A stretch of 64,000 nt of DNA from the IMG/VR virus record IMGVR_UViG_3300032562_000003, positions 194,860 to 258,859 of that record; one strand, given 5' to 3'. Shown one piece after another: positions 4,441 through 59,614 of this stretch. The position numbers and the translations under genes were made by a program. Each line of letters opens with the position of its first letter. Within the stretch, counting starts at the first letter, position 1. The notes under the pieces are model-generated. The model searched no databases. It saw nothing but the letters and a program-made list of their open reading frames with translations, and was not told the DNA's origin.

Positions 4441-4444
4441 AGCA

Positions 4445-4511
4445 TAAATAGATGTGAGTCGCGGGACTGCAATCCCCACTCACTCTAATGCTAGAAGGAG
4501 CTATCAGCATG
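4445..4511 (+). promoter_or_regulatory. Late promoter plus conserved structured leader of HNH gene (copy 1)
   Basis: TAAATA then GTGAGTCGC...CCCACTCACTCTAA...ATCAGCATG. GTGAGT pairs with ACTCAC. A near-identical layout occurs at 15265-15334 (-). Confidence 0.65.
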
Positions 4512-5171
4512 TCTATTTATCGTAAAATTTACGAACAGAATTTTGGTCCCATACCCAAAGACGGTGACGGAAGAAGTTGCGATGTTCATCATATAGATGG
4601 TAACCGCAATAATAATGTACCGGAAAATTTAATCGCATTGTCTATACAAGATCATTACGATATTCATTATCAGCAAGGAGATTATGGTGCATGTTGGCTC
4701 ATTTCAAGAAAGCTACGGTTGACGCCAGAGGAACTATCAGACCTCGCCAAATTAACCGGCGCCAACCGCATCGCAAACGGCACACATCACTTTTTAAAAA
4801 GGCCAGATGGGTCATCGTTAGGAAAAGACAGTGTACTCAGACAAACTGAAAACGGGACGAATGCTTTCTCTGGAGGAGAAGTTCAAAGAAAATCTAACGC
4901 TAAGCGAGTGAGGGAAGGAACTCACCATTTTCTTAGTGGTGATATACAAAGAAGAACTCAACAAAGGTTGGTGGAGAACGGGACTCATCATTTAATGGGG
5001 AACGGAGAATTTCAACGAAATGTTCAGAAAACATTGTTAGAGAATGGAACTCACCACTTTCTTACGAATCATCCAAATAAAATTCAGGTAACTTGTCCGC
5101 ATTGCAACAAAACTGGCGGAAAAACTAACATGCATCGATACCATTTCGATAAGTGTAGGGTCTTAAAATAA
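4509..5171 (+). CDS. HNH homing endonuclease with GTHHF repeats and C-terminal zinc-binding motif
   Basis: DVHHIDGNRNNNVPENL, five GT[HN]x[FL] repeats, and CPHC...HFDKC. ATG at 4509 follows AAGGAG. Confidence 0.88.
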   Translation: MSIYRKIYEQNFGPIPKDGDGRSCDVHHIDGNRNNNVPENLIALSIQDHYDIHYQQGDYGACWLISRKLRLTPEELSDLAKLTGANRIANGTHHFLKRPDGSSLGKDSVLRQTENGTNAFSGGEVQRKSNAKRVREGTHHFLSGDIQRRTQQRLVENGTHHLMGNGEFQRNVQKTLLENGTHHFLTNHPNKIQVTCPHCNKTGGKTNMHRYHFDKCRVLK

Positions 5172-5203: not shown

Positions 5204-7744
5204 ATGGCAATTAGAGAAGTATTCTACTCCGGTTCCAAACCCAATGTCCATCCAAGAGAAAAATTTGCTGAATCACTAGAAGATGCTAGGAATCAGTGTA
5301 CGACTGAGCATTTTTGGATTATCAACGAGTTTTGTGACTACCGTAAATTTGATTGGGACTTTGATTTCGAGCTATTACCTGACGAAGATATTTGGGCAGA
5401 GGCACACGACAATGTATGGCCTAGCCAACATCAAAAAGATAGTGGTACATGGCTGTGTCCTAAGGTAGCCGGTGATTATACTATCTATCGAACCGATGTT
5501 CCCCCAATTCAACGCAAGAATGAAATCAATGATTTTTGGATTATAGATCCGGCCCTGGATAAATCTAGGTTTGACTTTTCTTGGCACCCAGATCCTACGT
5601 CTCCTCCATACATATATCAATTCGGTACTCTGCTCGATGAAAACGACGGACCCAGATACGTCACTCCCTATAATGACGGAACCATAGTACATCTAGAACG
5701 CAAGGAGGTCATACTAGAAGACCTAGAGTTTTCGAAGTACTACATCACTACTACATTGGAAGATTTAATCAACGACCACACTAATGAAATCTTTTGGGCA
5801 TTGAATCCTGAAATTGATTATTCTGGGTTTGACTTTAAATGGGTCCCTGACAGTAAGAACGTATATCACATAAATGCATTTGGTACGAAAGACAATATAA
5901 ACTCCCAGACTTACTTTGTTAATGGTAAGATGTGGGCACGTGGTTATCGGGACATTAACTACATTGAGGATAAGGTACTAGATGTACGAACCAAGATCGA
6001 TATTTTCTTTGTCGATAAAGGAAATCCTCAGGCACAAGAACGCTTTCAGCAATTATCTGAGCGTATGGGCAACGTAACTAAAACTAGATATCTGAACAGC
6101 TGGGTTGACACGATCAATCGTTGTGTGACTAAATCAACTACCAATCTATGTTGGATTCTCAATAGTGAATTAGACTATTCGTCATTTGAGTTTGATTTCT
6201 ATCCTAGCCCATGGCAGATGAACTTAGTTCATGTGTTTGGAACTCAGTGGTCACACTGGGGAACAACCTTTATGGTTAACAAAAATACATTTGCTGATGA
6301 TACCAAATATATAAAAGTCATTGAGCATTTGCCTAATATAAATTTTGTAAAACGATCACCTGCTAAGGCAGTTGATTGTCTTTATGCTATAGTAATCATC
6401 GACCATGGTAACGGTGTTGATACAGTAAAAGATGATCTACTCAGTAAAAATCTGAGCGAAAGAAACATCATTGCTGTGAAATATGATACCAATTATCTAA
6501 AAACATTCAAGGAGGTACTCAGTAAATTAGATGTCAATCGTGAACATTATGTATGGATTTGTAGTAGCGTGTGTGATTATAGCAGATTTGATTTTAGCTA
6601 TATCTGCGATCCGTACACCAAAGAACAACTCCACGTCTTCCCGAGCGGTAATCAAAAATTAGGAGACACGTTTCTAGTAAACGTCAACAAGCTGCGCAAA
6701 TTGATAGCAGATATGCATCGTCTAGAAGACTATGAAAAGATTAATTATAATCAACATCAAGTTGTCTCAAGATTGATGACACCCACAACTATCGAAGGTG
6801 CATATTTTCCAAATGAAACACATATGGATTATGCTAGAAATTATGAATGGGATTTTCCTTATGTAACTCTAGTAACTGAAGAAAACTGGGATATGGATCC
6901 TGAAATTGATCCCGAACCTATGTGTCTTTGGTCACCCGAACAGAAAGCAATCATTATTTCTAGTACAGGTGCAACTAGAGTTACGATTCCTCGCGAGGCT
7001 AAAAACTATGTCAAAAGTGAACTGTATGATTACCCGTATATAAAGCGAGCAAAAAAACTAACCAAATCTAAACCGATGGACATAGTGTATCTCAGTAACG
7101 GTGAAGCCGGGGCCGAAAAAAACTGGGAGCATCTACTTCAAATTACTAAAAACATACCAAATAGGGTAGTCAGAGTGGATGGAGTTAATGGTCGAGTTGC
7201 TGCATATCATGCTGCTGCCGAAGCCAGCGAGACACCATGGTTATTTACGGTATTCGCTAAGTTACACATCAATTCTAATTTTGATTGGTCATGGCAACCA
7301 GATCGAATGCAAGCACCTAAGCATTATATCTTTCATGCGAAGAATCCGGTCAATGGATTGATCTACGGTCACCAAGCGATGATCGCGTATAATAAGCAAT
7401 TAGTGCTAGAGAATGACGGTTATGGACTAGACTTTACGTTGGATGACCTGCACGAAGTTGTTCCACTCATGTCCGGTACTGCAAACTATAACACTGATCC
7501 GTTCTCTACTTGGCGTACCGCATTCCGTGAAGTGGTCAAATTGAAGGCCGAAGATACCGACATTGCCCGAGAGCGATTAGAAGCTTGGCTTACTAAAGCT
7601 GAAGGTGATTTTGCAGAATATAGCATCAAGGGTGCAAAAGACGCAGAAGCCTATTACGATGAAGTTGATGGCGATTTTGATGCACTGCGATTGAGCTACG
7701 AGTGGGAATGGTTAAAATCACGCTTCGTGCAAAAATACGGTTGA
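5204..7744 (+). CDS. Large multi-module glycosyltransferase-like protein
   Basis: Recurring F[DE]FxWxPD/FDFSY modules. C-terminal GT-A-like region (DIVYLSNGE...RVDGVNGRVAAYHAAAEASETPW). Lies in a sugar-enzyme neighbourhood. Confidence 0.55.
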   Translation: MAIREVFYSGSKPNVHPREKFAESLEDARNQCTTEHFWIINEFCDYRKFDWDFDFELLPDEDIWAEAHDNVWPSQHQKDSGTWLCPKVAGDYTIYRTDVPPIQRKNEINDFWIIDPALDKSRFDFSWHPDPTSPPYIYQFGTLLDENDGPRYVTPYNDGTIVHLERKEVILEDLEFSKYYITTTLEDLINDHTNEIFWALNPEIDYSGFDFKWVPDSKNVYHINAFGTKDNINSQTYFVNGKMWARGYRDINYIEDKVLDVRTKIDIFFVDKGNPQAQERFQQLSERMGNVTKTRYLNSWVDTINRCVTKSTTNLCWILNSELDYSSFEFDFYPSPWQMNLVHVFGTQWSHWGTTFMVNKNTFADDTKYIKVIEHLPNINFVKRSPAKAVDCLYAIVIIDHGNGVDTVKDDLLSKNLSERNIIAVKYDTNYLKTFKEVLSKLDVNREHYVWICSSVCDYSRFDFSYICDPYTKEQLHVFPSGNQKLGDTFLVNVNKLRKLIADMHRLEDYEKINYNQHQVVSRLMTPTTIEGAYFPNETHMDYARNYEWDFPYVTLVTEENWDMDPEIDPEPMCLWSPEQKAIIISSTGATRVTIPREAKNYVKSELYDYPYIKRAKKLTKSKPMDIVYLSNGEAGAEKNWEHLLQITKNIPNRVVRVDGVNGRVAAYHAAAEASETPWLFTVFAKLHINSNFDWSWQPDRMQAPKHYIFHAKNPVNGLIYGHQAMIAYNKQLVLENDGYGLDFTLDDLHEVVPLMSGTANYNTDPFSTWRTAFREVVKLKAEDTDIARERLEAWLTKAEGDFAEYSIKGAKDAEAYYDEVDGDFDALRLSYEWEWLKSRFVQKYG

Positions 7745-7770
7745 CATGCAATGTCATATATGATTAAATA
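7741..7770 (+). promoter_or_regulatory. Promoter for tmRNA (sigma70-like overlapping late TAAATA)
   Basis: TTGACA (7741), 17-nt spacer, TTAAAT. TAAATA at 7765. Confidence 0.5.
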
Positions 7771-7775
7771 GTATT

Positions 7776-8105
7776 TGTTCGTTGATACGGACTTAAAACC
7801 GGGGAAGACAGGGGTGCGATTCCCCTCGCCTCCACCAGTAAACACACGATAACAGGACGCTGGCTCTGTGAAGCGGGATATCGGGGTAGCTGCCGAGAAG
7901 ACGGGGAGAGCATCGTGTGTTTTCTTATGGGGGCGTATAGTATCGATTCACGGCTAGTAGGAAAGTGGAGAACACGGTAAGAAACGACCGTCAATCAGTT
8001 CAAATTACTAAATGCAAACGAAAATGATGCATATGAAGGCCTTGCGTTAGCCGCATAAGTCTTTTGGGCTTTGCTAGTTGAGCCTCGAAACAGAATCAAC
8101 TAGCA
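7776..8105 (+). ncRNA. ssrA: Circularly permuted two-piece tmRNA, tag ANENDAYEGLALAA
   Basis: Acceptor piece comes first with T-arm GGGGTGCGATTCCCC and CGCCTCCACCA ending at 7837. Coding piece starts GGGGGCG at 7929 and pairs with CGCCTCC including the G3:U alanine determinant. Tag ORF 8014-8058 ends ALAA-stop. Terminal GCTAGTTGA/TCAACTAGC stem. Outer ends are approximate. Confidence 0.9.
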
Positions 8106-11610: not shown

Positions 11611-12711
11611 ATGTCTCGTGATATTGACACTCACACGATTACTTCTACTCAGGCCCGAAAGGCCATCCTCACTGCTTTCAAGGCAAAGCGTCCTGTCTTC
11701 CTCTGGGGTCCTCCGGGCATCGGCAAGTCGGAAGTCGTTCAGGAAATCACTGACGAACTCGGTGGTATCATGTTTGATCTGCGTATGGCGCAGATGGAAC
11801 CTACTGACATTCGCGGTATTCCCTTCTACAATAAGTACATCGGCAAGATGGATTGGGCTGAGCCCGTCGATCTGCCCAGTCAAGAAGTCGCCGATCAATA
11901 TCCGATCGTCGTTCTGTTCCTCGATGAAATGAACTCTGCTCCCCCTTCGGTGCAAGCTGCTGGCTATCAGCTGGTTCTGAACCGTCGAGTCGGTAAGTAC
12001 GTCCTCCCCGATAACGTCGTCATCGTTGCTGCTGGCAACCGTGACAGTGACAAGGGTGTCACGTATCGTATGCCCATGCCCCTTGCTAATCGCTTCGTTC
12101 ACCTCGAAATGAAGTATGATTTCGCTTCTTGGCAGATTTGGGCGGTCAACAAGAACATTCACAAGGACGTTGTCGGCTATCTGTCTTTCTCTAAGCAAGA
12201 CGGTTATGACTTCGACGCTAAGAGCTCCAGTCGAGCCTTCGCTACTCCTCGTTCTTGGACTTTCGTGAGCGATCTGCTCGTTGACGAACAAAACGTGGAT
12301 AACGATACTCTGTTCAATCTCGTTGCCGGCGCGATCGGTGATGGTCTCGCAACGAAGTTCATGGCTCACCGTCGAGTTGCTGGTCAGATGCCTGACCCGG
12401 CTGACATTCTTGAAGGTAGGGTCAAGGATCTTAAGGTCAAGGAAATCTCGGCTATGTACTCGTTGACGATCTCCATGTGCTATGAACTGAAGGACGCTCT
12501 CGAAAACAAGCGTGTGGACAACAAGAAGTTCCATGAAATGGGCAGCAACTTCATCGAATACATCATGAATAATTTCGAGACGGAACTGGTGGTCATGGGC
12601 GCTAAGATCGCCCTCAAGACTTACAAGCTGCCGCTTGAGCCCTCGCAACTGCGTAACTTTGATGAATTCTACAAGAAGTACGGCAAGTACATTGTAGAAG
12701 CTGGCAACTAA
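11611..12711 (+). CDS. MoxR-like AAA+ ATPase
   Basis: LWGPPGIGKS Walker A, LFLDEMN Walker B, AAGNR, LANRF. Adjacent to a vWA gene. Confidence 0.88.
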   Translation: MSRDIDTHTITSTQARKAILTAFKAKRPVFLWGPPGIGKSEVVQEITDELGGIMFDLRMAQMEPTDIRGIPFYNKYIGKMDWAEPVDLPSQEVADQYPIVVLFLDEMNSAPPSVQAAGYQLVLNRRVGKYVLPDNVVIVAAGNRDSDKGVTYRMPMPLANRFVHLEMKYDFASWQIWAVNKNIHKDVVGYLSFSKQDGYDFDAKSSSRAFATPRSWTFVSDLLVDEQNVDNDTLFNLVAGAIGDGLATKFMAHRRVAGQMPDPADILEGRVKDLKVKEISAMYSLTISMCYELKDALENKRVDNKKFHEMGSNFIEYIMNNFETELVVMGAKIALKTYKLPLEPSQLRNFDEFYKKYGKYIVEAGN

Positions 12712-12724
12712 GTCAGCGGCTCCT

Positions 12725-12758
12725 GGGGAGGGATTAGAGACAGTCCCTCCCCTTTTTT
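12725..12758 (+). terminator. Rho-independent terminator
   Basis: GGGGAGGGA/TCCCTCCCC stem followed by T6. Confidence 0.8.
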
Positions 12759-12826
12759 CTATTATCTATTGCATATCATGCCGCATTCTGTTATATTGTC
12801 TTATAACTTAATCAAAGGACACATTC

Positions 12827-14116
12827 ATGAGCGCCGTAATTACCCCTACTAAAAAGAGCAAGCGTACTCGCAGCAAGAAGTACGAAAATCTTATCGGTCC
12901 TATGGATCCTAAGATTGATGCTCAAGCCCGCGAACGTCTTGTTACGGCACGCATCGGTCTCCTTCTGCGTCATGCGTTTTTCGGCAACCTTGCTACTCGT
13001 CTTGCTCTTACTAATGCGGACGAATGGTGTCCGACTGCTGCGACCGACGGTCTGAGATTTTACTATAACTCTCGCTTCATCATGATGCTCAAGACGAAGG
13101 AAGTTGAATTCCTCGTTGGTCACGAAGTTCTGCACGTGGTCTACGATCACATGGGTCGTCGTGACAATCGTGATCCGGAAATCTGGAACATCGCTGATGA
13201 CTATGCAGTCAACGCAGACTTGAAGCGTCACCGCGTGGGCGAATTTATTACTACTGTGCCTTGCTTGTATGAGTCTAAGTACGAAAACTGGGCCGCAGAA
13301 GCCATCTACGATGACCTCATGAAGAATGTCAAGTACATCAATATTGAGGATCTCCTCGACAAGATGTTGGACGATCACGTTGACGGTGACGACGACGGCG
13401 ACGGCCGCGCAGGCGGCGACAAACCTGGCAAGGGCCGCCCCAAGCTTTCTCAGGAAGAAAAGGACCGCATTCGTCAAGAGGTCCGTCAAGCGGTAATCAA
13501 CGCTGCTTCTACGGCTGAGGCTGGCACTGTTCCGAAGGGCGTTGAACGCATGATCAAGCAACTGACTAGCCCGATCATGCCCTGGCGCGAATTGATCCAA
13601 ACTAATCTGACCTCTGCTATCAAGTCTGATTATACTTGGATGCGTCCTTCTCGTCGCAGCTGGCACATGGACGCTGTCATGCCCGGCATGAATCCTGGCG
13701 AAGAAATTGACGTTGACATTTATATCGACATGTCAGGTTCTATCTCGCAGAAGCAAGGTATGCAGTTTCTTTCGGAAGTTGCCGGCATGATGGATGCGTT
13801 CGATGGCTACAGCCTTCGGGTCTCGACATTCGACACTAAGGTCTATAACACTCAAGAATTTTCTTCTGAAAACATGGAAAACATTGAGGAGTATCAACTG
13901 TTCGGTGGCGGTGGCACTGACTTTGACTGCGTATTCGATGACCTTAAGGAAGCAGGACGAGTTCCGGCTCGTCTGATCGTCTTCACGGACGGGTATCCTT
14001 GCGGCAGCTGGGGCGATCAAAATTACTGTGATACGACTTGGATCATTCACGGTGACCCCGATCCTCACCCGCCCTTCGGTCAATGGGCCATTTATGATGA
14101 CCATCGCAAGTCCTAA
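12827..14116 (+). CDS. DUF2201-type putative metallopeptidase + vWA domain protein
   Basis: TAATDG, HEVLH (HExxH), MIDAS motif IDMSGS, TFDT, GGGGTDF and VFTDGY. Confidence 0.85.
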   Translation: MSAVITPTKKSKRTRSKKYENLIGPMDPKIDAQARERLVTARIGLLLRHAFFGNLATRLALTNADEWCPTAATDGLRFYYNSRFIMMLKTKEVEFLVGHEVLHVVYDHMGRRDNRDPEIWNIADDYAVNADLKRHRVGEFITTVPCLYESKYENWAAEAIYDDLMKNVKYINIEDLLDKMLDDHVDGDDDGDGRAGGDKPGKGRPKLSQEEKDRIRQEVRQAVINAASTAEAGTVPKGVERMIKQLTSPIMPWRELIQTNLTSAIKSDYTWMRPSRRSWHMDAVMPGMNPGEEIDVDIYIDMSGSISQKQGMQFLSEVAGMMDAFDGYSLRVSTFDTKVYNTQEFSSENMENIEEYQLFGGGGTDFDCVFDDLKEAGRVPARLIVFTDGYPCGSWGDQNYCDTTWIIHGDPDPHPPFGQWAIYDDHRKS

Positions 14117-14398: not shown

Positions 14399-14636
14399 CG
14401 ACATTAACATAAATCAGTGGTTCATGGACCGAGAATTAAGTCATACCCCTGAACATTTTATAAGATCAAGCACTCCTTTTACTATCGAGTCGCGCATGTG
14501 GATTTTGGAAAGCCTTCAAGGCAGATTTTCTACACATTACCCCAACACATCGACCTATATTATGAATAGAATAGCACTTTGTCCATCGTTTGAAGATCCA
14601 CAAGAAGCAGTGTTTTACGAACTCAAGTGGGGCTAG
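14385..14636 (+). CDS. Small hypothetical protein, FxxExDxxxFxL[RK]W-like family
   Basis: GTG start. C-terminus FEDPQEAVFYELKWG. Confidence 0.6.
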   Translation: MKTIDDININQWFMDRELSHTPEHFIRSSTPFTIESRMWILESLQGRFSTHYPNTSTYIMNRIALCPSFEDPQEAVFYELKWG

Positions 14637-15267
14637 GTCTTACTAGTTCCCACCCTCCAGTAGCGTTAAGTCCTTTGTTATTTACAATACGACTAATTGC
14701 ACCGGACTTGAGATTATAACATGTCCTTAATTGATAATTCGTCATTGATACTACCTCCCCGGTCATACGATTTTTCCAAGTTCTAACAGTATGGTCATAC
14801 TGCGGATGTTTTTCTTTTTTCTTGGGGTCATTAACAAAATGATGAGTCCCGGCAGCAAGTCTGTTTAATTGTCGTTTACTGGCAGCTTCCCTGTCCAACC
14901 AATTATGTGTTCCATTAAGAATGCGGTCTCTGTTTAGTTGCGCTTGGTGCTTGTTGGGCCCAACCCAAGGATGCTTGCCCGTTTTAACTAGCTTGTTAGC
15001 ATTTTTTGTTGCGAGGGCTACTAGCTCATCGGGAAGTAAGTTGATCCTACTTGACATTTTTACACAAGCTGCCCAATCACCCTGTGAATAATGAATGTTG
15101 TAATGTTCTTGTATAGATACACATTTCAAGTTAGCAGGATTATTATTGGAATGATTTCCGTCTATATGATGTATTTCATATGACCGACCCGACTCTTCCT
15201 TAGGAATTGGACCGTAGTGATGTTCATAGATATTACGGTACTTGTTTGTACCACAATAAATACACAT
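14623..15267 (-). CDS. HNH homing endonuclease, paralog of 4509-5171
   Basis: YGPIPKEESGRSYEIHHIDGNHSNNNPANL, three G[TK]H[HNP][FW] repeats and a different C-terminal region. Inserted antisense to its neighbours. Confidence 0.88.
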   Translation of the reverse strand: MCIYCGTNKYRNIYEHHYGPIPKEESGRSYEIHHIDGNHSNNNPANLKCVSIQEHYNIHYSQGDWAACVKMSSRINLLPDELVALATKNANKLVKTGKHPWVGPNKHQAQLNRDRILNGTHNWLDREAASKRQLNRLAAGTHHFVNDPKKKEKHPQYDHTVRTWKNRMTGEVVSMTNYQLRTCYNLKSGAISRIVNNKGLNATGGWELVRPSPT

Positions 15268-15334
15268 GCTGATTGCTACTTATAAGCTGTTAGAGTGAGT
15301 GGGTACTAGTAATACTGCGACTCACACTTATTTA
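15265..15334 (-). promoter_or_regulatory. Late promoter plus conserved structured leader of HNH gene (copy 2)
   Basis: Reverse complement reads TAAATA-AGT-GTGAGTCGC-AGTATTACTAGTA-CCCACTCACTCTAA-...-AATCAGCATG. Confidence 0.65.
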
Positions 15335-15392
15335 TCTTTTTTATACCAACACACCCTACTCACTAAATACTTTTAGCAAAGGAGAATTAATA

Positions 15393-58260: not shown

Positions 58261-58327
58261 TAAATATAGAAAGAACACTCTGTTGAGAGTTTACGCGGTT
58301 ACCCACCGCGTAGTGGCTAGAACCCAC
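58261..58327 (+). promoter_or_regulatory. Late promoter and three-hairpin leader
   Basis: TAAATA at 58261; ACTCT/AGAGT, TACGCGG/CCGCGTA and GTGG/CCAC stems before AAGGAG. Confidence 0.55.
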
Positions 58328-58345
58328 ACATAAAGGAGAAAACAA

Positions 58346-59614
58346 ATGGGACGTCCTCTAAAGATTGCGAAGGCACAAGCAGTCGTAACTATCACAAACA
58401 CAACTACTACGACCAACGTCGTAACAACTTCAGCAAATTTCACCACGCTAGGTATTATTGCAGGTATGCCGTTCGTAACTGCATCTAGCATCGGTGGACT
58501 TACTGCCGGAAAGCTATATTGGATTCTTAGCATATTGAATGCAGGAAACAATAGCACCTTCACTGTTTCTGCAACACCGCTTAATGCTAATCCAACTAAT
58601 GCACAAGTTCCACTAAGCACTGCTTCGGGTTCTGTTTCGACTACTGTTGCTCCAGTTGACATGTATTTCAACAATCCAACCGGATCACAATGGCCTGCAA
58701 CTAATGCAAACACTTACTCAGTAGTAGGTGGAAATACTGCTCTTTACGGTAATCAAGTTCTATGTAATGTAGGATTTGGTGTAAACGGCACTGGTACTGA
58801 GTTTGCTTCCACGTCAAGCAATGTGGTTGTAGGATTAGGTACTGATTTTGCAAACGTTGCAACTGGTACTATTCTTTACGCAATTTGGGCTGATGGATCA
58901 CAACAACTTTTAGGAACTACGACCTCAACTAACGGCAATCTAACGGTAGCTGTTGCTAACACTACTGCAACAGGTAACGTTATAGGTACTTCAGGTAATG
59001 CTCAAACACTTACTGTAAATACTCCGGTGGTATTTGACGCATCCTTCGGTAACCTAACTGCAGGTACAACTTACTTTGTCAAAACTATCGCTAACGCAGC
59101 AGCATTCACTGTTTCTACTACACCAGGCGGCGCGGTGCAGGCACTAACTTCAAACGTTAGCGTAACTGGAAATGCAGTTCAAAATCGTGTTGTGTTGAGT
59201 GCCGTTTCAGCTAATAACTCAAGTGGTCCAACTGGTTACGGAGACCCATTCGTTCAGGTTCTTCCAGAAGCAGGATACATTGTGCGTCAAAAGGGCAAGC
59301 AAAAGTATTTGGTAAAGGGCACTACAACTGGTATCGTGGGTGCAGCATATACTGCTAATCTTGCTAATACTGCTCTAACACCAAACACAATGACTATTAC
59401 TGCAACTTATGCAAATAGTTCAACTGTTAATGTTCAAAGCTTGAGCGATCACACTGCGGAACTATTCAGTTCCACTTCAGGAACTACTGCTACCGGCAAC
59501 ATCGTTCTAGAAAATGCAAACCCTGCATATGCAACGTTCAATAGTGCAGCGGCAGCAGACGCAAATACAGCAAATGCTCAACCTTACCCAATCGTGACTA
59601 TCGGCGCAGCGTAA
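58346..59614 (+). CDS. Virion structural protein (Thr/Asn/Ala-rich, internally repeated beta domain)
   Basis: Two copies of an F...(I)GGLTAG..Y(W/F)(I/V)...FTVS.TP-type unit; strong RBS. Confidence 0.65.
   Translation: MGRPLKIAKAQAVVTITNTTTTTNVVTTSANFTTLGIIAGMPFVTASSIGGLTAGKLYWILSILNAGNNSTFTVSATPLNANPTNAQVPLSTASGSVSTTVAPVDMYFNNPTGSQWPATNANTYSVVGGNTALYGNQVLCNVGFGVNGTGTEFASTSSNVVVGLGTDFANVATGTILYAIWADGSQQLLGTTTSTNGNLTVAVANTTATGNVIGTSGNAQTLTVNTPVVFDASFGNLTAGTTYFVKTIANAAAFTVSTTPGGAVQALTSNVSVTGNAVQNRVVLSAVSANNSSGPTGYGDPFVQVLPEAGYIVRQKGKQKYLVKGTTTGIVGAAYTANLANTALTPNTMTITATYANSSTVNVQSLSDHTAELFSSTSGTTATGNIVLENANPAYATFNSAAAADANTANAQPYPIVTIGAA

What the first reader, a model, noticed from the sequence alone, without database searches (positions are those of the whole stretch)
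4764..5063. 21-25-aa GTH[HN][FW] tandem repeats as variable-copy modules in HNH endonucleases
Seen: HNH1 has five units (GTHHFL, GTNAFS, GTHHFL, GTHHLM, GTHHFL; spacings 25, 21, 21 and 22 aa), each preceded by a basic helix-like segment. HNH2 has three units (GKHPW, GTHNW, GTHHF; spacings 22 and 21) and a different C-terminal domain. Established: phage homing endonucleases use modular DNA-binding units such as NUMODs. Inference: a repeat DNA-binding array whose copy number and variable residues could tune target specificity.
Basis: partly seen in the sequence, partly recalled or inferred. Interest (0 to 1): 0.6.

Follow-up and report, generated by a model that had tools for sequence, protein, structure and literature searches.

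The report
Uncatalogued DNA-binding repeat in homing endonucleases
Two phage homing-endonuclease genes carry a real tandem repeat of about 21 residues (a basic helix plus a Gly-Thr-His-x-Phe turn); the characterised enzyme I-TevIII and about a thousand metagenomic nucleases have it too, it is swapped between nuclease families, and no curated family or searched paper describes it.

Summary
HNH1 (window 4488/4509..5171, +) has five G-T-[HN]-x-[FL] units at spacings of 25, 21, 21 and 22 aa. HNH2 (14623..15267, -) has three, at 22 and 21 aa.

Both are catalytically intact HNH_3 nucleases of the I-TevIII family. I-TevIII itself carries five units, which its 2007 biochemical study did not recognise. 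Mapped onto that study's deletions, the units fall in the protease-accessible region that extends the footprint, and residues 166-193 are needed for DNA binding.

Among about 230 relatives collected here:
- Copy number runs from 2 to about 10.
- There are four unit classes: 21A, 21B, 17-mer and 18-mer.
- The array is fused to HNH_3, GIY-YIG or MobE-like HNH catalytic domains.
- Its C-terminal partner is a CCHC zinc finger, an HTH-like domain or another domain.

It is not NUMOD3. The Pfam model gives no hit at E<=10, and hhalign probability is 0.2-9%. AlphaFold models each unit as a 12-14-residue helix plus an 8-9-residue loop, with no match in the PDB.

Best reading: an uncatalogued NUMOD-like module that binds and tethers along DNA. 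Copy number would set the span of DNA contacted, and a variable helix face may tune sequence preference. That last step is untested.

Side finding: seven homing-endonuclease genes in this genome share a promoter-plus-hairpin leader.

The parts
4444..4508 (+). HNH1 5' leader: ATAAATA box (4444-4450), hairpin (outer arms 4454-4459 and 4478-4483), GGAG (4497-4500)
   Evidence: The same element precedes 7 homing-endonuclease genes of the genome and the orthologues L017 and L020, with compensatory changes in both stems. No Rfam match.
4509..5171 (+). HNH1 gene, I-TevIII-family free-standing HNH homing endonuclease. The ORF is open from ATG 4488; the likely real start is ATG 4509 (M8 of P0001).
   Evidence: Start inferred from the shared leader and SD and from the paralogues' M-x-I-Y start. 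Residues 1-7 have pLDDT <50.
4521..4667 (+). HNH_3 catalytic domain (P0001 residues 12-60); H34, H35, N47 and H56 correspond to I-TevIII H26, H27, N39 and H48
   Evidence: Pfam PF13392 E 1.2e-10. These residues are invariant in the alignment with I-TevIII. Their alanine mutants abolish cleavage in I-TevIII (PMC1865063).
4725..4778 (+). 'Unit 0' helix (residues 80-97) that ends in R-I-A-N before the first G-T-H
   Evidence: AF2 helix 80-96; its sequence resembles the helix ends of the units.
4779..4853 (+). Unit 1 (residues 98-122), 25 aa, 21B-like class with a K-R-P-D-G-S-S loop
4854..4916 (+). Unit 2 (residues 123-143), 21A class
   Evidence: unit HMM E 2e-14.
4917..4979 (+). Unit 3 (residues 144-164), 21A class
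   Evidence: unit HMM E 1.5e-16.
4980..5045 (+). Unit 4 (residues 165-186), 22 aa
5046..5063 (+). Unit 5 turn motif (residues 187-192), leading into the zinc finger
5094..5156 (+). C-x2-C-x12-H-x3-C zinc finger (C203, C206, H219, C223)
   Evidence: Same motif as the two zinc fingers of I-TevIII, which bind zinc and are needed for DNA binding (PMC1865063). AF2 beta-hairpin plus helix at 200-218. Also found in Seg-like and MobE-like genes of this genome and of phage HY03.
14623..15267 (-). HNH2 gene, HNH_3 nuclease with three units
14836..14979 (-). HNH2 array: unit 1 at 14979-14914, unit 2 at 14913-14851, unit 3 motif at 14850-14836
14626..14820 (-). HNH2 C-terminal domain (residues 150-214), probably a NUMOD1 / I-HmuI_NUMOD-like helix-turn-helix
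   Evidence: Atlas feature and structure neighbours carry PF22083, PF07453, PF20987 and PF07460. This is a lead only; Pfam itself gives no hit.
15268..15335 (-). HNH2 5' leader with the same ATAAATA box, hairpin and C-A-A-T-C-A-G-C before the ATG

Best explanation
The G-T-H-x-F units form a modular DNA-binding and tethering repeat of homing endonucleases. It is functionally analogous to NUMOD3 but is a distinct sequence family that no curated library holds.

Each unit is a basic, 12-14-residue alpha-helix followed by an 8-9-residue turn. The main class has the consensus G-T-H-h-F-L-G-G, then E-I-Q-R-K-x-N-x-K-R-V-x-N.

The array does not fold into a compact domain. It is laid out along the DNA, probably in or near the minor groove, between a C-terminal anchor and the N-terminal HNH nuclease. 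The anchor is a CCHC zinc finger in HNH1 and an HTH-like domain in HNH2.

The number and class of units then set how much DNA is contacted and how far from the anchor the nuclease cuts. The conserved helix face (Q11, R12, N15, R18) would supply generic DNA contacts. The variable face (positions 13, 14, 16, 20) could bias sequence preference.

Shown here: the repeat, its conservation, its modular shuffling, its local structure, and its absence from the curated families.
Shown in the literature for the homologue I-TevIII: the region is protease-accessible, part of it is required for binding, it lengthens the footprint towards the cut site, and the footprint has a 3' stagger.
Inferred: direct DNA contact by each unit, the ruler role, and any role in specificity.
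For: - HNH1 is 37% identical to I-TevIII over 95% of its length, and both genes match PHROG 12324 at E 5e-48 and 2.5e-29.
- I-TevIII has units at G111, G132, G156, G177 and G201, followed by zinc fingers starting at C211/C214.
- In PMC1865063, fragments 145C, 155C and 166C bind the homing site. Fragment 194C is folded, zinc-loaded and dimeric but does not bind, so residues 166-193 (units 3-4) are needed.
- In the same paper, 145C gives a shorter footprint towards the cleavage site than the full-length enzyme. Protease sites at 86-96, 145-166 and 194 lie inside the array. The footprints show 3' stagger, which the authors read as minor-groove contact.
- Family survey: 1212 homologues; 2 to about 10 units; four unit classes.
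- An array-only search gave 940 hits. They include GIY-YIG (PF01541) fusions, a MobE-like HNH fusion and other N-terminal domains, with several different C-terminal domains.
- In this same genome, other endonucleases place NUMOD3-like units in the same position, before the same zinc finger.
- 49 of 106 pairs with >=75% identical HNH domains differ in unit count.
- Position entropy: G1, H3, F5, R12, R18 and V19 are conserved; positions 13, 14, 16 and 20 are the most variable. Array pI is 10-11.
- AF2: pLDDT 85-88 with a helix-loop periodicity, but pTM only 0.43-0.55.
- The array-only model has no PDB neighbour: VIA best Z 3.6 at rmsd 16 A or more, and Foldseek finds none. This fits an extended, non-globular chain.
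Against: - There is no direct DNA-binding datum for HNH1, HNH2 or any isolated array.
- The I-TevIII deletions were not designed around units, and they cut inside helices.
- The models were made without DNA, and their low pTM leaves the inter-unit geometry unknown.
- Direct orthologues of HNH1 keep exactly five units at 61-81% identity. Copy number is therefore stable where the presumed target is stable. That is compatible with the model but is not evidence for tuning.
- The regex-based unit counts miss degenerate units.
Confidence: 0.65

Rival explanations
1. The array is mainly a spacer or ruler. It is a semi-flexible, positively charged linker that gives non-specific affinity and fixes the distance between the anchor domain and the nuclease. 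Sequence specificity would come from the zinc finger or HTH and from the nuclease itself.
For: The I-TevIII array is protease-accessible, and the paper's authors model the region towards the cut site as flexible. The most conserved helix residues are generic basic or polar ones (R12, K17, R18, Q11). Low pTM. By analogy from established knowledge, the I-TevI linker and zinc finger act as a distance determinant (cited in PMC1865063).
Against: Residues 166-193 are required for binding at all. Four distinct unit classes and a variable helix face are conserved family-wide, which is more order than a pure spacer needs.
Confidence: 0.25
2. The repeats serve protein-protein contacts (dimerisation, as reported for I-TevIII) or bind metal through the conserved histidines, rather than contacting DNA.
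For: I-TevIII is reported to be a dimer, with the interface in the C-terminal part. Every unit has one or two His (H3 95%, H4 40%).
Against: Dimerisation maps to residues 194-241, which is the last unit plus the first zinc finger. Fragment 194C still dimerises without units 1-4. Fragment 96C, which holds all the units, carries only about 2 Zn per molecule, the same as the zinc fingers alone. That assay releases cysteine-bound zinc, so His-only sites are not strictly excluded.
Confidence: 0.05
3. The repeat is simply a divergent NUMOD3/IENR2 array, so it is already known.
For: It has the same position in the architecture and the same helix-plus-glycine-turn design. The 18-mer class carries a G-[DE]-x-N-P turn like the G-E-x-N-P of NUMOD3. 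hhalign places these turns together at E 0.0035 and probability 9%.
Against: The Pfam NUMOD3 model gives no hit at E<=10 in HNH1, HNH2 or I-TevIII. At E<=1 it is not among the 25 most-matched families of the 77 relatives scanned. In a six-frame scan of the genome at E<=10 it finds 8 sites in other genes and none in the three genes with this repeat. The main 21-mer class against NUMOD3 gives hhalign probability 0.2%, whereas 21-mer against 18-mer gives 99%. The period is 21, 17 or 18 aa against 24.
Confidence: 0.05

Closest known systems
I-TevIII (nrdB-intron HNH homing endonuclease of phage RB3; Robbins et al. 2007, PMC1865063)
   Same: It has the same HNH_3 catalytic domain, with all four catalytic residues. 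It has the same repeat (five units) and the same CX2CX12-13HX3C zinc finger. HNH1 is 37% identical over 95% of its length.
   Different: I-TevIII is intron-encoded and has two zinc fingers. HNH1 and HNH2 are free-standing: Rfam finds no group I intron in the window, and each has its own promoter-like leader. HNH1 has one zinc finger. HNH2 has an HTH-like domain instead. [quoted passage not shown]
NUMOD3 / IENR2 (PF07460), the helix motif of I-TevI-type and Seg/Mob endonucleases
   Same: It is a short, basic helix-plus-turn unit in tandem copies. It lies between the catalytic domain and a C-terminal anchor and is shuffled among GIY-YIG and HNH nucleases. In this genome it sits in front of the same zinc finger.
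   Different: Its period is 24 aa, with a G-K-x-H-S-x-E ... K-I-S ... G-x-x-N-P-x-Y signature. There is no HMM or profile-profile match to the units studied here.
I-TevI DNA-binding domain (zinc finger, minor-groove helix, HTH; PDB 1I3J) and I-HmuI (1U3E)
   Same: The design is extended and lacks a core, running along a long target. The nuclease is tethered at a distance from the anchor, and the footprints are 3'-staggered (established knowledge, and PMC1865063).
   Different: No structural match of the array model to these entries. Only the HNH core of the full-length model touches 1U3E, weakly (Foldseek E 1.1, VIA Z 4.8).
TALE, PUF or pentatricopeptide-type repeat codes
   Same: Tandem helical units with a few hypervariable positions and a variable copy number.
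   Different: This is an analogy only. The units here have one helix, the models show no solenoid with any confidence, and there is no evidence for a one-unit, fixed-step code.

Membership tests
I-TevIII-like HNH_3 homing endonucleases (PF13392; PHROG 12324) | HNH_3 motif with the catalytic His-His, Asn and His | tested here: met
   PF13392 at E 1.2e-10 (HNH1) and 9e-13 (HNH2). Equivalents of H26, H27, N39 and H48 are invariant.
I-TevIII-like HNH_3 homing endonucleases (PF13392; PHROG 12324) | Similarity to I-TevIII beyond the catalytic domain | tested here: met
   HNH1 aligns over residues 11-225 at E 6e-41. PHROG 12324 covers 11-194 of HNH1 and 9-147 of HNH2, which is the nuclease plus the array.
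I-TevIII-like HNH_3 homing endonucleases (PF13392; PHROG 12324) | C-terminal CX2CX12-13HX3C zinc finger(s) | tested here: inconclusive
   HNH1 has one finger (C203, C206, H219, C223). HNH2 and the third paralogue (L012) have none and carry another domain.
I-TevIII-like HNH_3 homing endonucleases (PF13392; PHROG 12324) | Encoded inside a group I intron | tested here: not met
   Rfam at gathering threshold finds no intron in the window. Both genes lie between ORFs and have their own leaders.
I-TevIII-like HNH_3 homing endonucleases (PF13392; PHROG 12324) | Site-specific cleavage and homing | not testable with these tools
   Needs an assay. Every relative recovered for the HNH1 locus already carries the gene, so no empty site was found.
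NUMOD3 / IENR2 (PF07460) | Match to the family model at or above 20.4 bits | tested here: not met
   No hit at E<=10 in HNH1, HNH2 or I-TevIII. At E<=1 it is not among the 25 most-matched families of the 77 relatives scanned. The genome scan at E<=10 hits 8 other sites and none in these genes.
NUMOD3 / IENR2 (PF07460) | 24-aa period with G-K-x-H-S/T ... K-I-S ... G-x-x-N-P-x-Y | tested here: not met
   Periods are 21, 17 or 18 aa and the signature differs. hhalign probability 0.2-9%.
NUMOD3 / IENR2 (PF07460) | Tandem helix units between nuclease and anchor, shuffled among nuclease families | tested here: met
   This is a shared way of working and does not make it a member.
NUMOD1 / IENR1 / I-HmuI_NUMOD-like HTH (for the HNH2 C-terminus only) | Match to PF07453, PF22083 or PF20987 | tested here: inconclusive
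   No Pfam hit. Atlas neighbours by features (0.89) and by structure (TM 0.58-0.78 by query) carry these families.

The most novel reading that the evidence does not exclude
The array is a semi-programmable DNA reader. Each unit would cover a fixed step of DNA, and the four unit classes together with positions 13, 14, 16 and 20 would encode sequence preference. If so, target sites of free-standing endonucleases could be predicted from the array, and arrays could be rebuilt to retarget HNH or GIY-YIG nucleases.
Probability: 0.12. Interest if true: 0.85.

Novelty: new variant of a known kind. Interest (0 to 1): 0.55.

Why it matters
Homing endonucleases are models for modular protein-DNA recognition and are used as parts for engineered nucleases. 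A further module type emerges here. It is already present in a well-studied enzyme and is abundant in uncultured phages: about a thousand 90%-identity clusters, against essentially only I-TevIII among 50,697 deposited phage records.

- It explains an unassigned 100-residue region of I-TevIII.
- It gives a concrete unit map for deletion and swap experiments.
- It would improve annotation. Many carriers are labelled 'hypothetical protein', and some are hit by the unrelated Pfam model Rsc14.
- It offers arrays of 2 to about 10 units as natural variants, to test whether array length sets the distance between binding site and cut site.

Tried and rejected
1. Identity with NUMOD3, NUMOD1 or NUMOD4: no Pfam hit. 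Local hhalign against a NUMOD3 alignment built from 13 model-registered hits gave probability 0.2-9%.
2. Recent DNA duplication: TRF finds nothing.
3. A known fold:
 - Foldseek on the full model gave nothing better than E 0.55.
 - VIA-wide on the full model matched only residues 52-119, as generic helical hairpins.
 - The array-only model gave VIA best Z 3.6 at very large rmsd, and Foldseek found none.
 - Sequence and profile searches of the PDB found nothing for the array.
4. A lead from memory that cyanophage F-CphI is I-TevIII-like was wrong: it is an Endo VII-type enzyme.
5. Literature:
 - No paper holds both NUMOD3 and I-TevIII.
 - A motif-string search found nothing relevant.
 - The His-Me finger classification speaks only of NUMOD, HTH and AP2 modules for this group.
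6. Intron-encoded: rejected.
7. The Pfam Rsc14 and SHIRT hits were taken as spurious or unexplained, not as homology.
8. The large representative-protein search was not run. The word search already gave about a thousand relatives, and the claim does not rest on their absence.
9. No complex prediction was run, because the report does not claim a protein-protein interaction.
10. NCBIfam: nothing relevant.

Full report
**1. What is there**

The ORF 4488..5171 (+) encodes a 227-aa protein, P0001. The ORF 14623..15267 (-) encodes a 214-aa protein, P0002.

- HNH1: G98, G123, G144, G165, G187, with spacings of 25, 21, 21 and 22 aa.
- HNH2: G97, G119, G140, with spacings of 22 and 21 aa.

There is no nucleotide-level tandem repeat. 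The units are therefore old and are kept by selection on the protein.

**2. What the genes are**

Both proteins match Pfam HNH_3 at the N-terminus and nothing else above noise. Both match PHROG 12324, 'intron-like DNA endonuclease', at E 5e-48 and 2.5e-29.

By tblastn against deposited phages, the best relatives of HNH1 are the I-TevIII genes of T-even phages: 37% identity over 95% of the length, E 6e-41.

The four I-TevIII residues whose alanine mutants abolish cleavage (H26, H27, N39, H48; PMC1865063) are invariant in HNH1, in HNH2 and in a third paralogue elsewhere in the genome.

HNH1 ends in one C-x2-C-x12-H-x3-C finger. This is the motif of the two I-TevIII zinc fingers.

HNH2 and the third paralogue carry a different C-terminal domain of about 65 residues. 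Its Atlas neighbours carry NUMOD1, I-HmuI_NUMOD-like and I-TevI DNA-binding annotations. That is a lead only, because Pfam gives no hit.

Rfam finds no group I intron in the window, so both genes are free-standing.

The window is the last 64 kb of a 258,859-bp IMG/VR virus record, estimated 73% complete. Its large terminase is 49-50% identical to those of jumbo phages such as PA5oct and Phosso.

**3. The repeat is a family-wide module**

*I-TevIII and the HNH_3 family.* I-TevIII itself has five units, at G111, G132, G156, G177 and G201. The word search with HNH1 returned 1212 proteins at E<=1e-5. In the best 120, regex-counted units run from 2 to 8.

*Unit classes.* The units fall into four classes:
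- 21A, the main class: G-T-H-h-F-L-G-G-E-I-Q-R-K-x-N-x-K-R-V-x-N.
- 21B, with a K-R-P-D-G-S-S loop.
- A 17-mer.
- An 18-mer, with a G-[DE]-x-N-P turn.

*Other nuclease families.* A second search restricted to the array of an eight-unit member gave 940 hits. Many of them have a GIY-YIG domain (PF01541) in place of HNH_3. Others have a MobE-like HNH or an unassigned N-terminal domain.

*C-terminal partners.* These are the zinc finger, a Trp/Cys-rich domain, or a third domain type.

*Rate of change.* Among pairs whose HNH domains are >=75% identical, 49 of 106 differ in unit count. One example has about 8-10 units against 4 at 86% identity. Arrays therefore change faster than the nuclease.

*Stability in direct orthologues.* The direct orthologues of HNH1 in related jumbo phages are 81% and 61% identical. 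They keep all five units and the same genomic position, just upstream of a large repeat protein.

*Rarity in cultured phages.* Among 50,697 deposited phage records, the array is found essentially only in T-even I-TevIII genes.

**4. Is it a known family?**

*Curated models.* Pfam NUMOD1, NUMOD3 and NUMOD4 give no hit at E<=10 to HNH1, HNH2 or I-TevIII. At E<=1, none of them is among the 25 most-matched families of the 77 relatives scanned.

*Genome scan.* A six-frame scan of the whole genome with the NUMOD3 model at E<=10 finds eight sites in other endonuclease genes. It finds none in the three genes with this repeat.

*Profile-profile comparison.* I built a NUMOD3 alignment from 13 model-registered hits and compared profiles with hhalign:
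- 21-mer class against NUMOD3: probability 0.2%.
- 18-mer class against NUMOD3: probability 9%, resting only on the shared G-x-x-N-P turn.
- 21-mer against 18-mer, as the positive control: probability 99%.

*Other libraries and papers.* NCBIfam has nothing. The open literature I could search does not describe the repeat. The I-TevIII paper states that lack of conservation outside the HNH motif prevented the localisation of other domains.

*Limit.* I could not consult InterPro, SMART or CDD.

**5. Structure**

*Full-length HNH1.* AlphaFold2 with a 77-sequence alignment gives pLDDT 88 and pTM 0.55. Every unit is a 12-13-residue helix plus an 8-9-residue loop.

*Array alone.* With 120 sequences the model has pLDDT 85 and pTM 0.43, with the same periodicity.

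*Searches for a known fold.* All searches for a known fold came back empty for the array:
- Foldseek against the PDB finds nothing for the array.
- The exhaustive VIA search gives best Z 3.6 at rmsd 16 A or more, mostly to long coiled coils. I read this as an elongated, non-globular chain.
- Sequence and profile searches of the PDB find nothing either.

**6. How it most likely works**

*Mapping onto the published I-TevIII constructs* (PMC1865063):
- Fragments starting at 145, 155 or 166 bind the homing site.
- The protease-stable fragment 194-269 contains the last turn motif and both zinc fingers. It still binds zinc and dimerises, but it does not bind DNA. Residues 166-193 are therefore required: the end of unit 3 and most of unit 4.
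- Fragment 145C protects less DNA towards the cleavage site than the full enzyme does. Units 1-2 therefore extend the contact.
- All protease-sensitive sites lie inside the array.
- The footprints are 3'-staggered, which the authors read as minor-groove binding.
- Dimerisation maps to 194-241, not to units 1-4.

*Evidence from the sequences:*
- The arrays are basic, with pI 10-11.
- One helix stripe is conserved: Q11, R12, N15, R18, with I10 and V19 as packing residues.
- Another stripe is the most variable: positions 13, 14, 16 and 20.

*Other endonucleases of the same genome.* These are Seg-like GIY-YIG and MobE-like HNH genes. They place NUMOD3-like units at the same position, in front of the same zinc finger.

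*Conclusion.* The array is a NUMOD3-like way of working built from a different repeat. It is an extended string of basic helices that binds along the DNA and tethers the nuclease to a C-terminal anchor. Whether unit number and the variable stripe change the sequence that is recognised, or only the reach and the affinity, is not decided by any data here.

**7. Side findings**

*A shared leader on seven endonuclease genes.* The three HNH genes with this repeat and four Seg-like GIY-YIG genes of this genome share a 5' leader of about 70 nt. Two of the four GIY-YIG genes are broken. The leader consists of:
- an ATAAATA box, which resembles a T4 late promoter;
- a hairpin with two compensatory versions of the outer stem and a covarying inner stem;
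- T-C-T-A-A-Y-G-C-T-A, then GGAG, then C-A-A-T-C-A-G-C, and then an ATG opening M-x-I-Y.

It has no Rfam match. It implies that HNH1 starts at ATG 4509.

*An odd Pfam match.* The Pfam model Rsc14 (PF08586) matches two consecutive units with its positions 45-91, at 22-29 bits against a gathering score of 25. No PDB chain matches the array profile. No yeast RSC subunit was found by it. I treat the Rsc14 hit as an unexplained or spurious similarity, and as an annotation hazard.

*RNA genes in the window.* The window also holds a permuted, alphaproteobacterial-type tmRNA and a freshwater-2 RNA motif.

**8. Verdict**

This is a new variant of a known kind: an uncatalogued nuclease-associated modular repeat, with an experimentally tractable member (I-TevIII) already in hand.

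Noticed in passing
window 4444-4511 and 15268-15335 (-); genome G000:C1 CTCTAA sites 30222+, 97218-, 131525+, 132550+, 142709-, 199342+, 210154-: Seven homing-endonuclease genes share a 5' leader of about 70 nt: three HNH_3 genes with the repeat and four Seg-like GIY-YIG genes, two of them broken. It holds an ATAAATA box, a hairpin with compensatory changes in both stems, GGAG, C-A-A-T-C-A-G-C and an ATG opening M-x-I-Y. It is kept in the orthologues L017 and L020 and has no Rfam match. It may be a late-promoter and 5'-stem-loop expression cassette that travels with these genes.
   Followed up: partly
window 4488-4511: The longest ORF of HNH1 starts at ATG 4488. The shared leader, the GGAG at 4497-4500 and the paralogues' starts point instead to ATG 4509 (220 aa). 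Residues 1-7 are modelled with pLDDT <50.
   Followed up: yes
proteins P0009, P0008, P0023, P0112, P0139, P0166, P0215 (relatives): The Pfam model PF08586 (RSC complex subunit Rsc14/Ldb7) matches two consecutive units with its positions 45-91. It hits 20 of 77 relatives, some above its gathering score of 25 bits. SHIRT (PF18655) also exceeds its cut-off on one array. No PDB chain matches the array profile. These are probably spurious and are a source of mis-annotation.
   Followed up: partly
window 7737-8104 (+): A phage-encoded permuted (two-piece) tmRNA of the alphaproteobacterial type: RF04321 at 113.8 bits and RF01849 at 78.2 bits. This hints at an alphaproteobacterial host.
   Followed up: no
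window 58276-58348 (+): A freshwater-2 RNA motif (RF02980, 65.2 bits), just upstream of the ORF 58346..59614.
   Followed up: no
window 5204-7744 (+); L017 5687-10681; L020 1277-5941: The 846-aa protein downstream of HNH1 has no Pfam or PHROG match and contains internal repeats. Its orthologues in related jumbo phages are expanded to 1554 and more than 1699 aa by more copies of the same repeat.
   Followed up: partly
protein P0007 (relative on a 19-kb contig); compare window 4691-4849: A 97%-identical variant of HNH1 in which the gene call begins in another frame. The HNH domain is disrupted while the array and zinc finger stay intact. It looks like a decaying copy.
   Followed up: no
G000:C1 about 26.9-30.9 kb, 69 kb, 74 kb, 96.5-97.2 kb, 126.5 kb, 131.5-132.6 kb, 142 kb, 178.6 kb; phage HY03 loci L008, L009: The genome holds at least ten homing-endonuclease genes or remnants. 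The same CX2CX12HX3C finger ends HNH_3, MobE-like HNH and Seg-like GIY-YIG proteins here and in the T4-like phage HY03. The finger is therefore itself a shuffled module.
   Followed up: partly
window 11611-14116 (+) and 14623-15267 (-): HNH2 lies on the opposite strand to almost all its neighbours. It sits directly after a MoxR-like AAA ATPase and a DUF2201 metallopeptidase/VWA gene pair and before an unknown ORF. This fits an inserted mobile gene.
   Followed up: no
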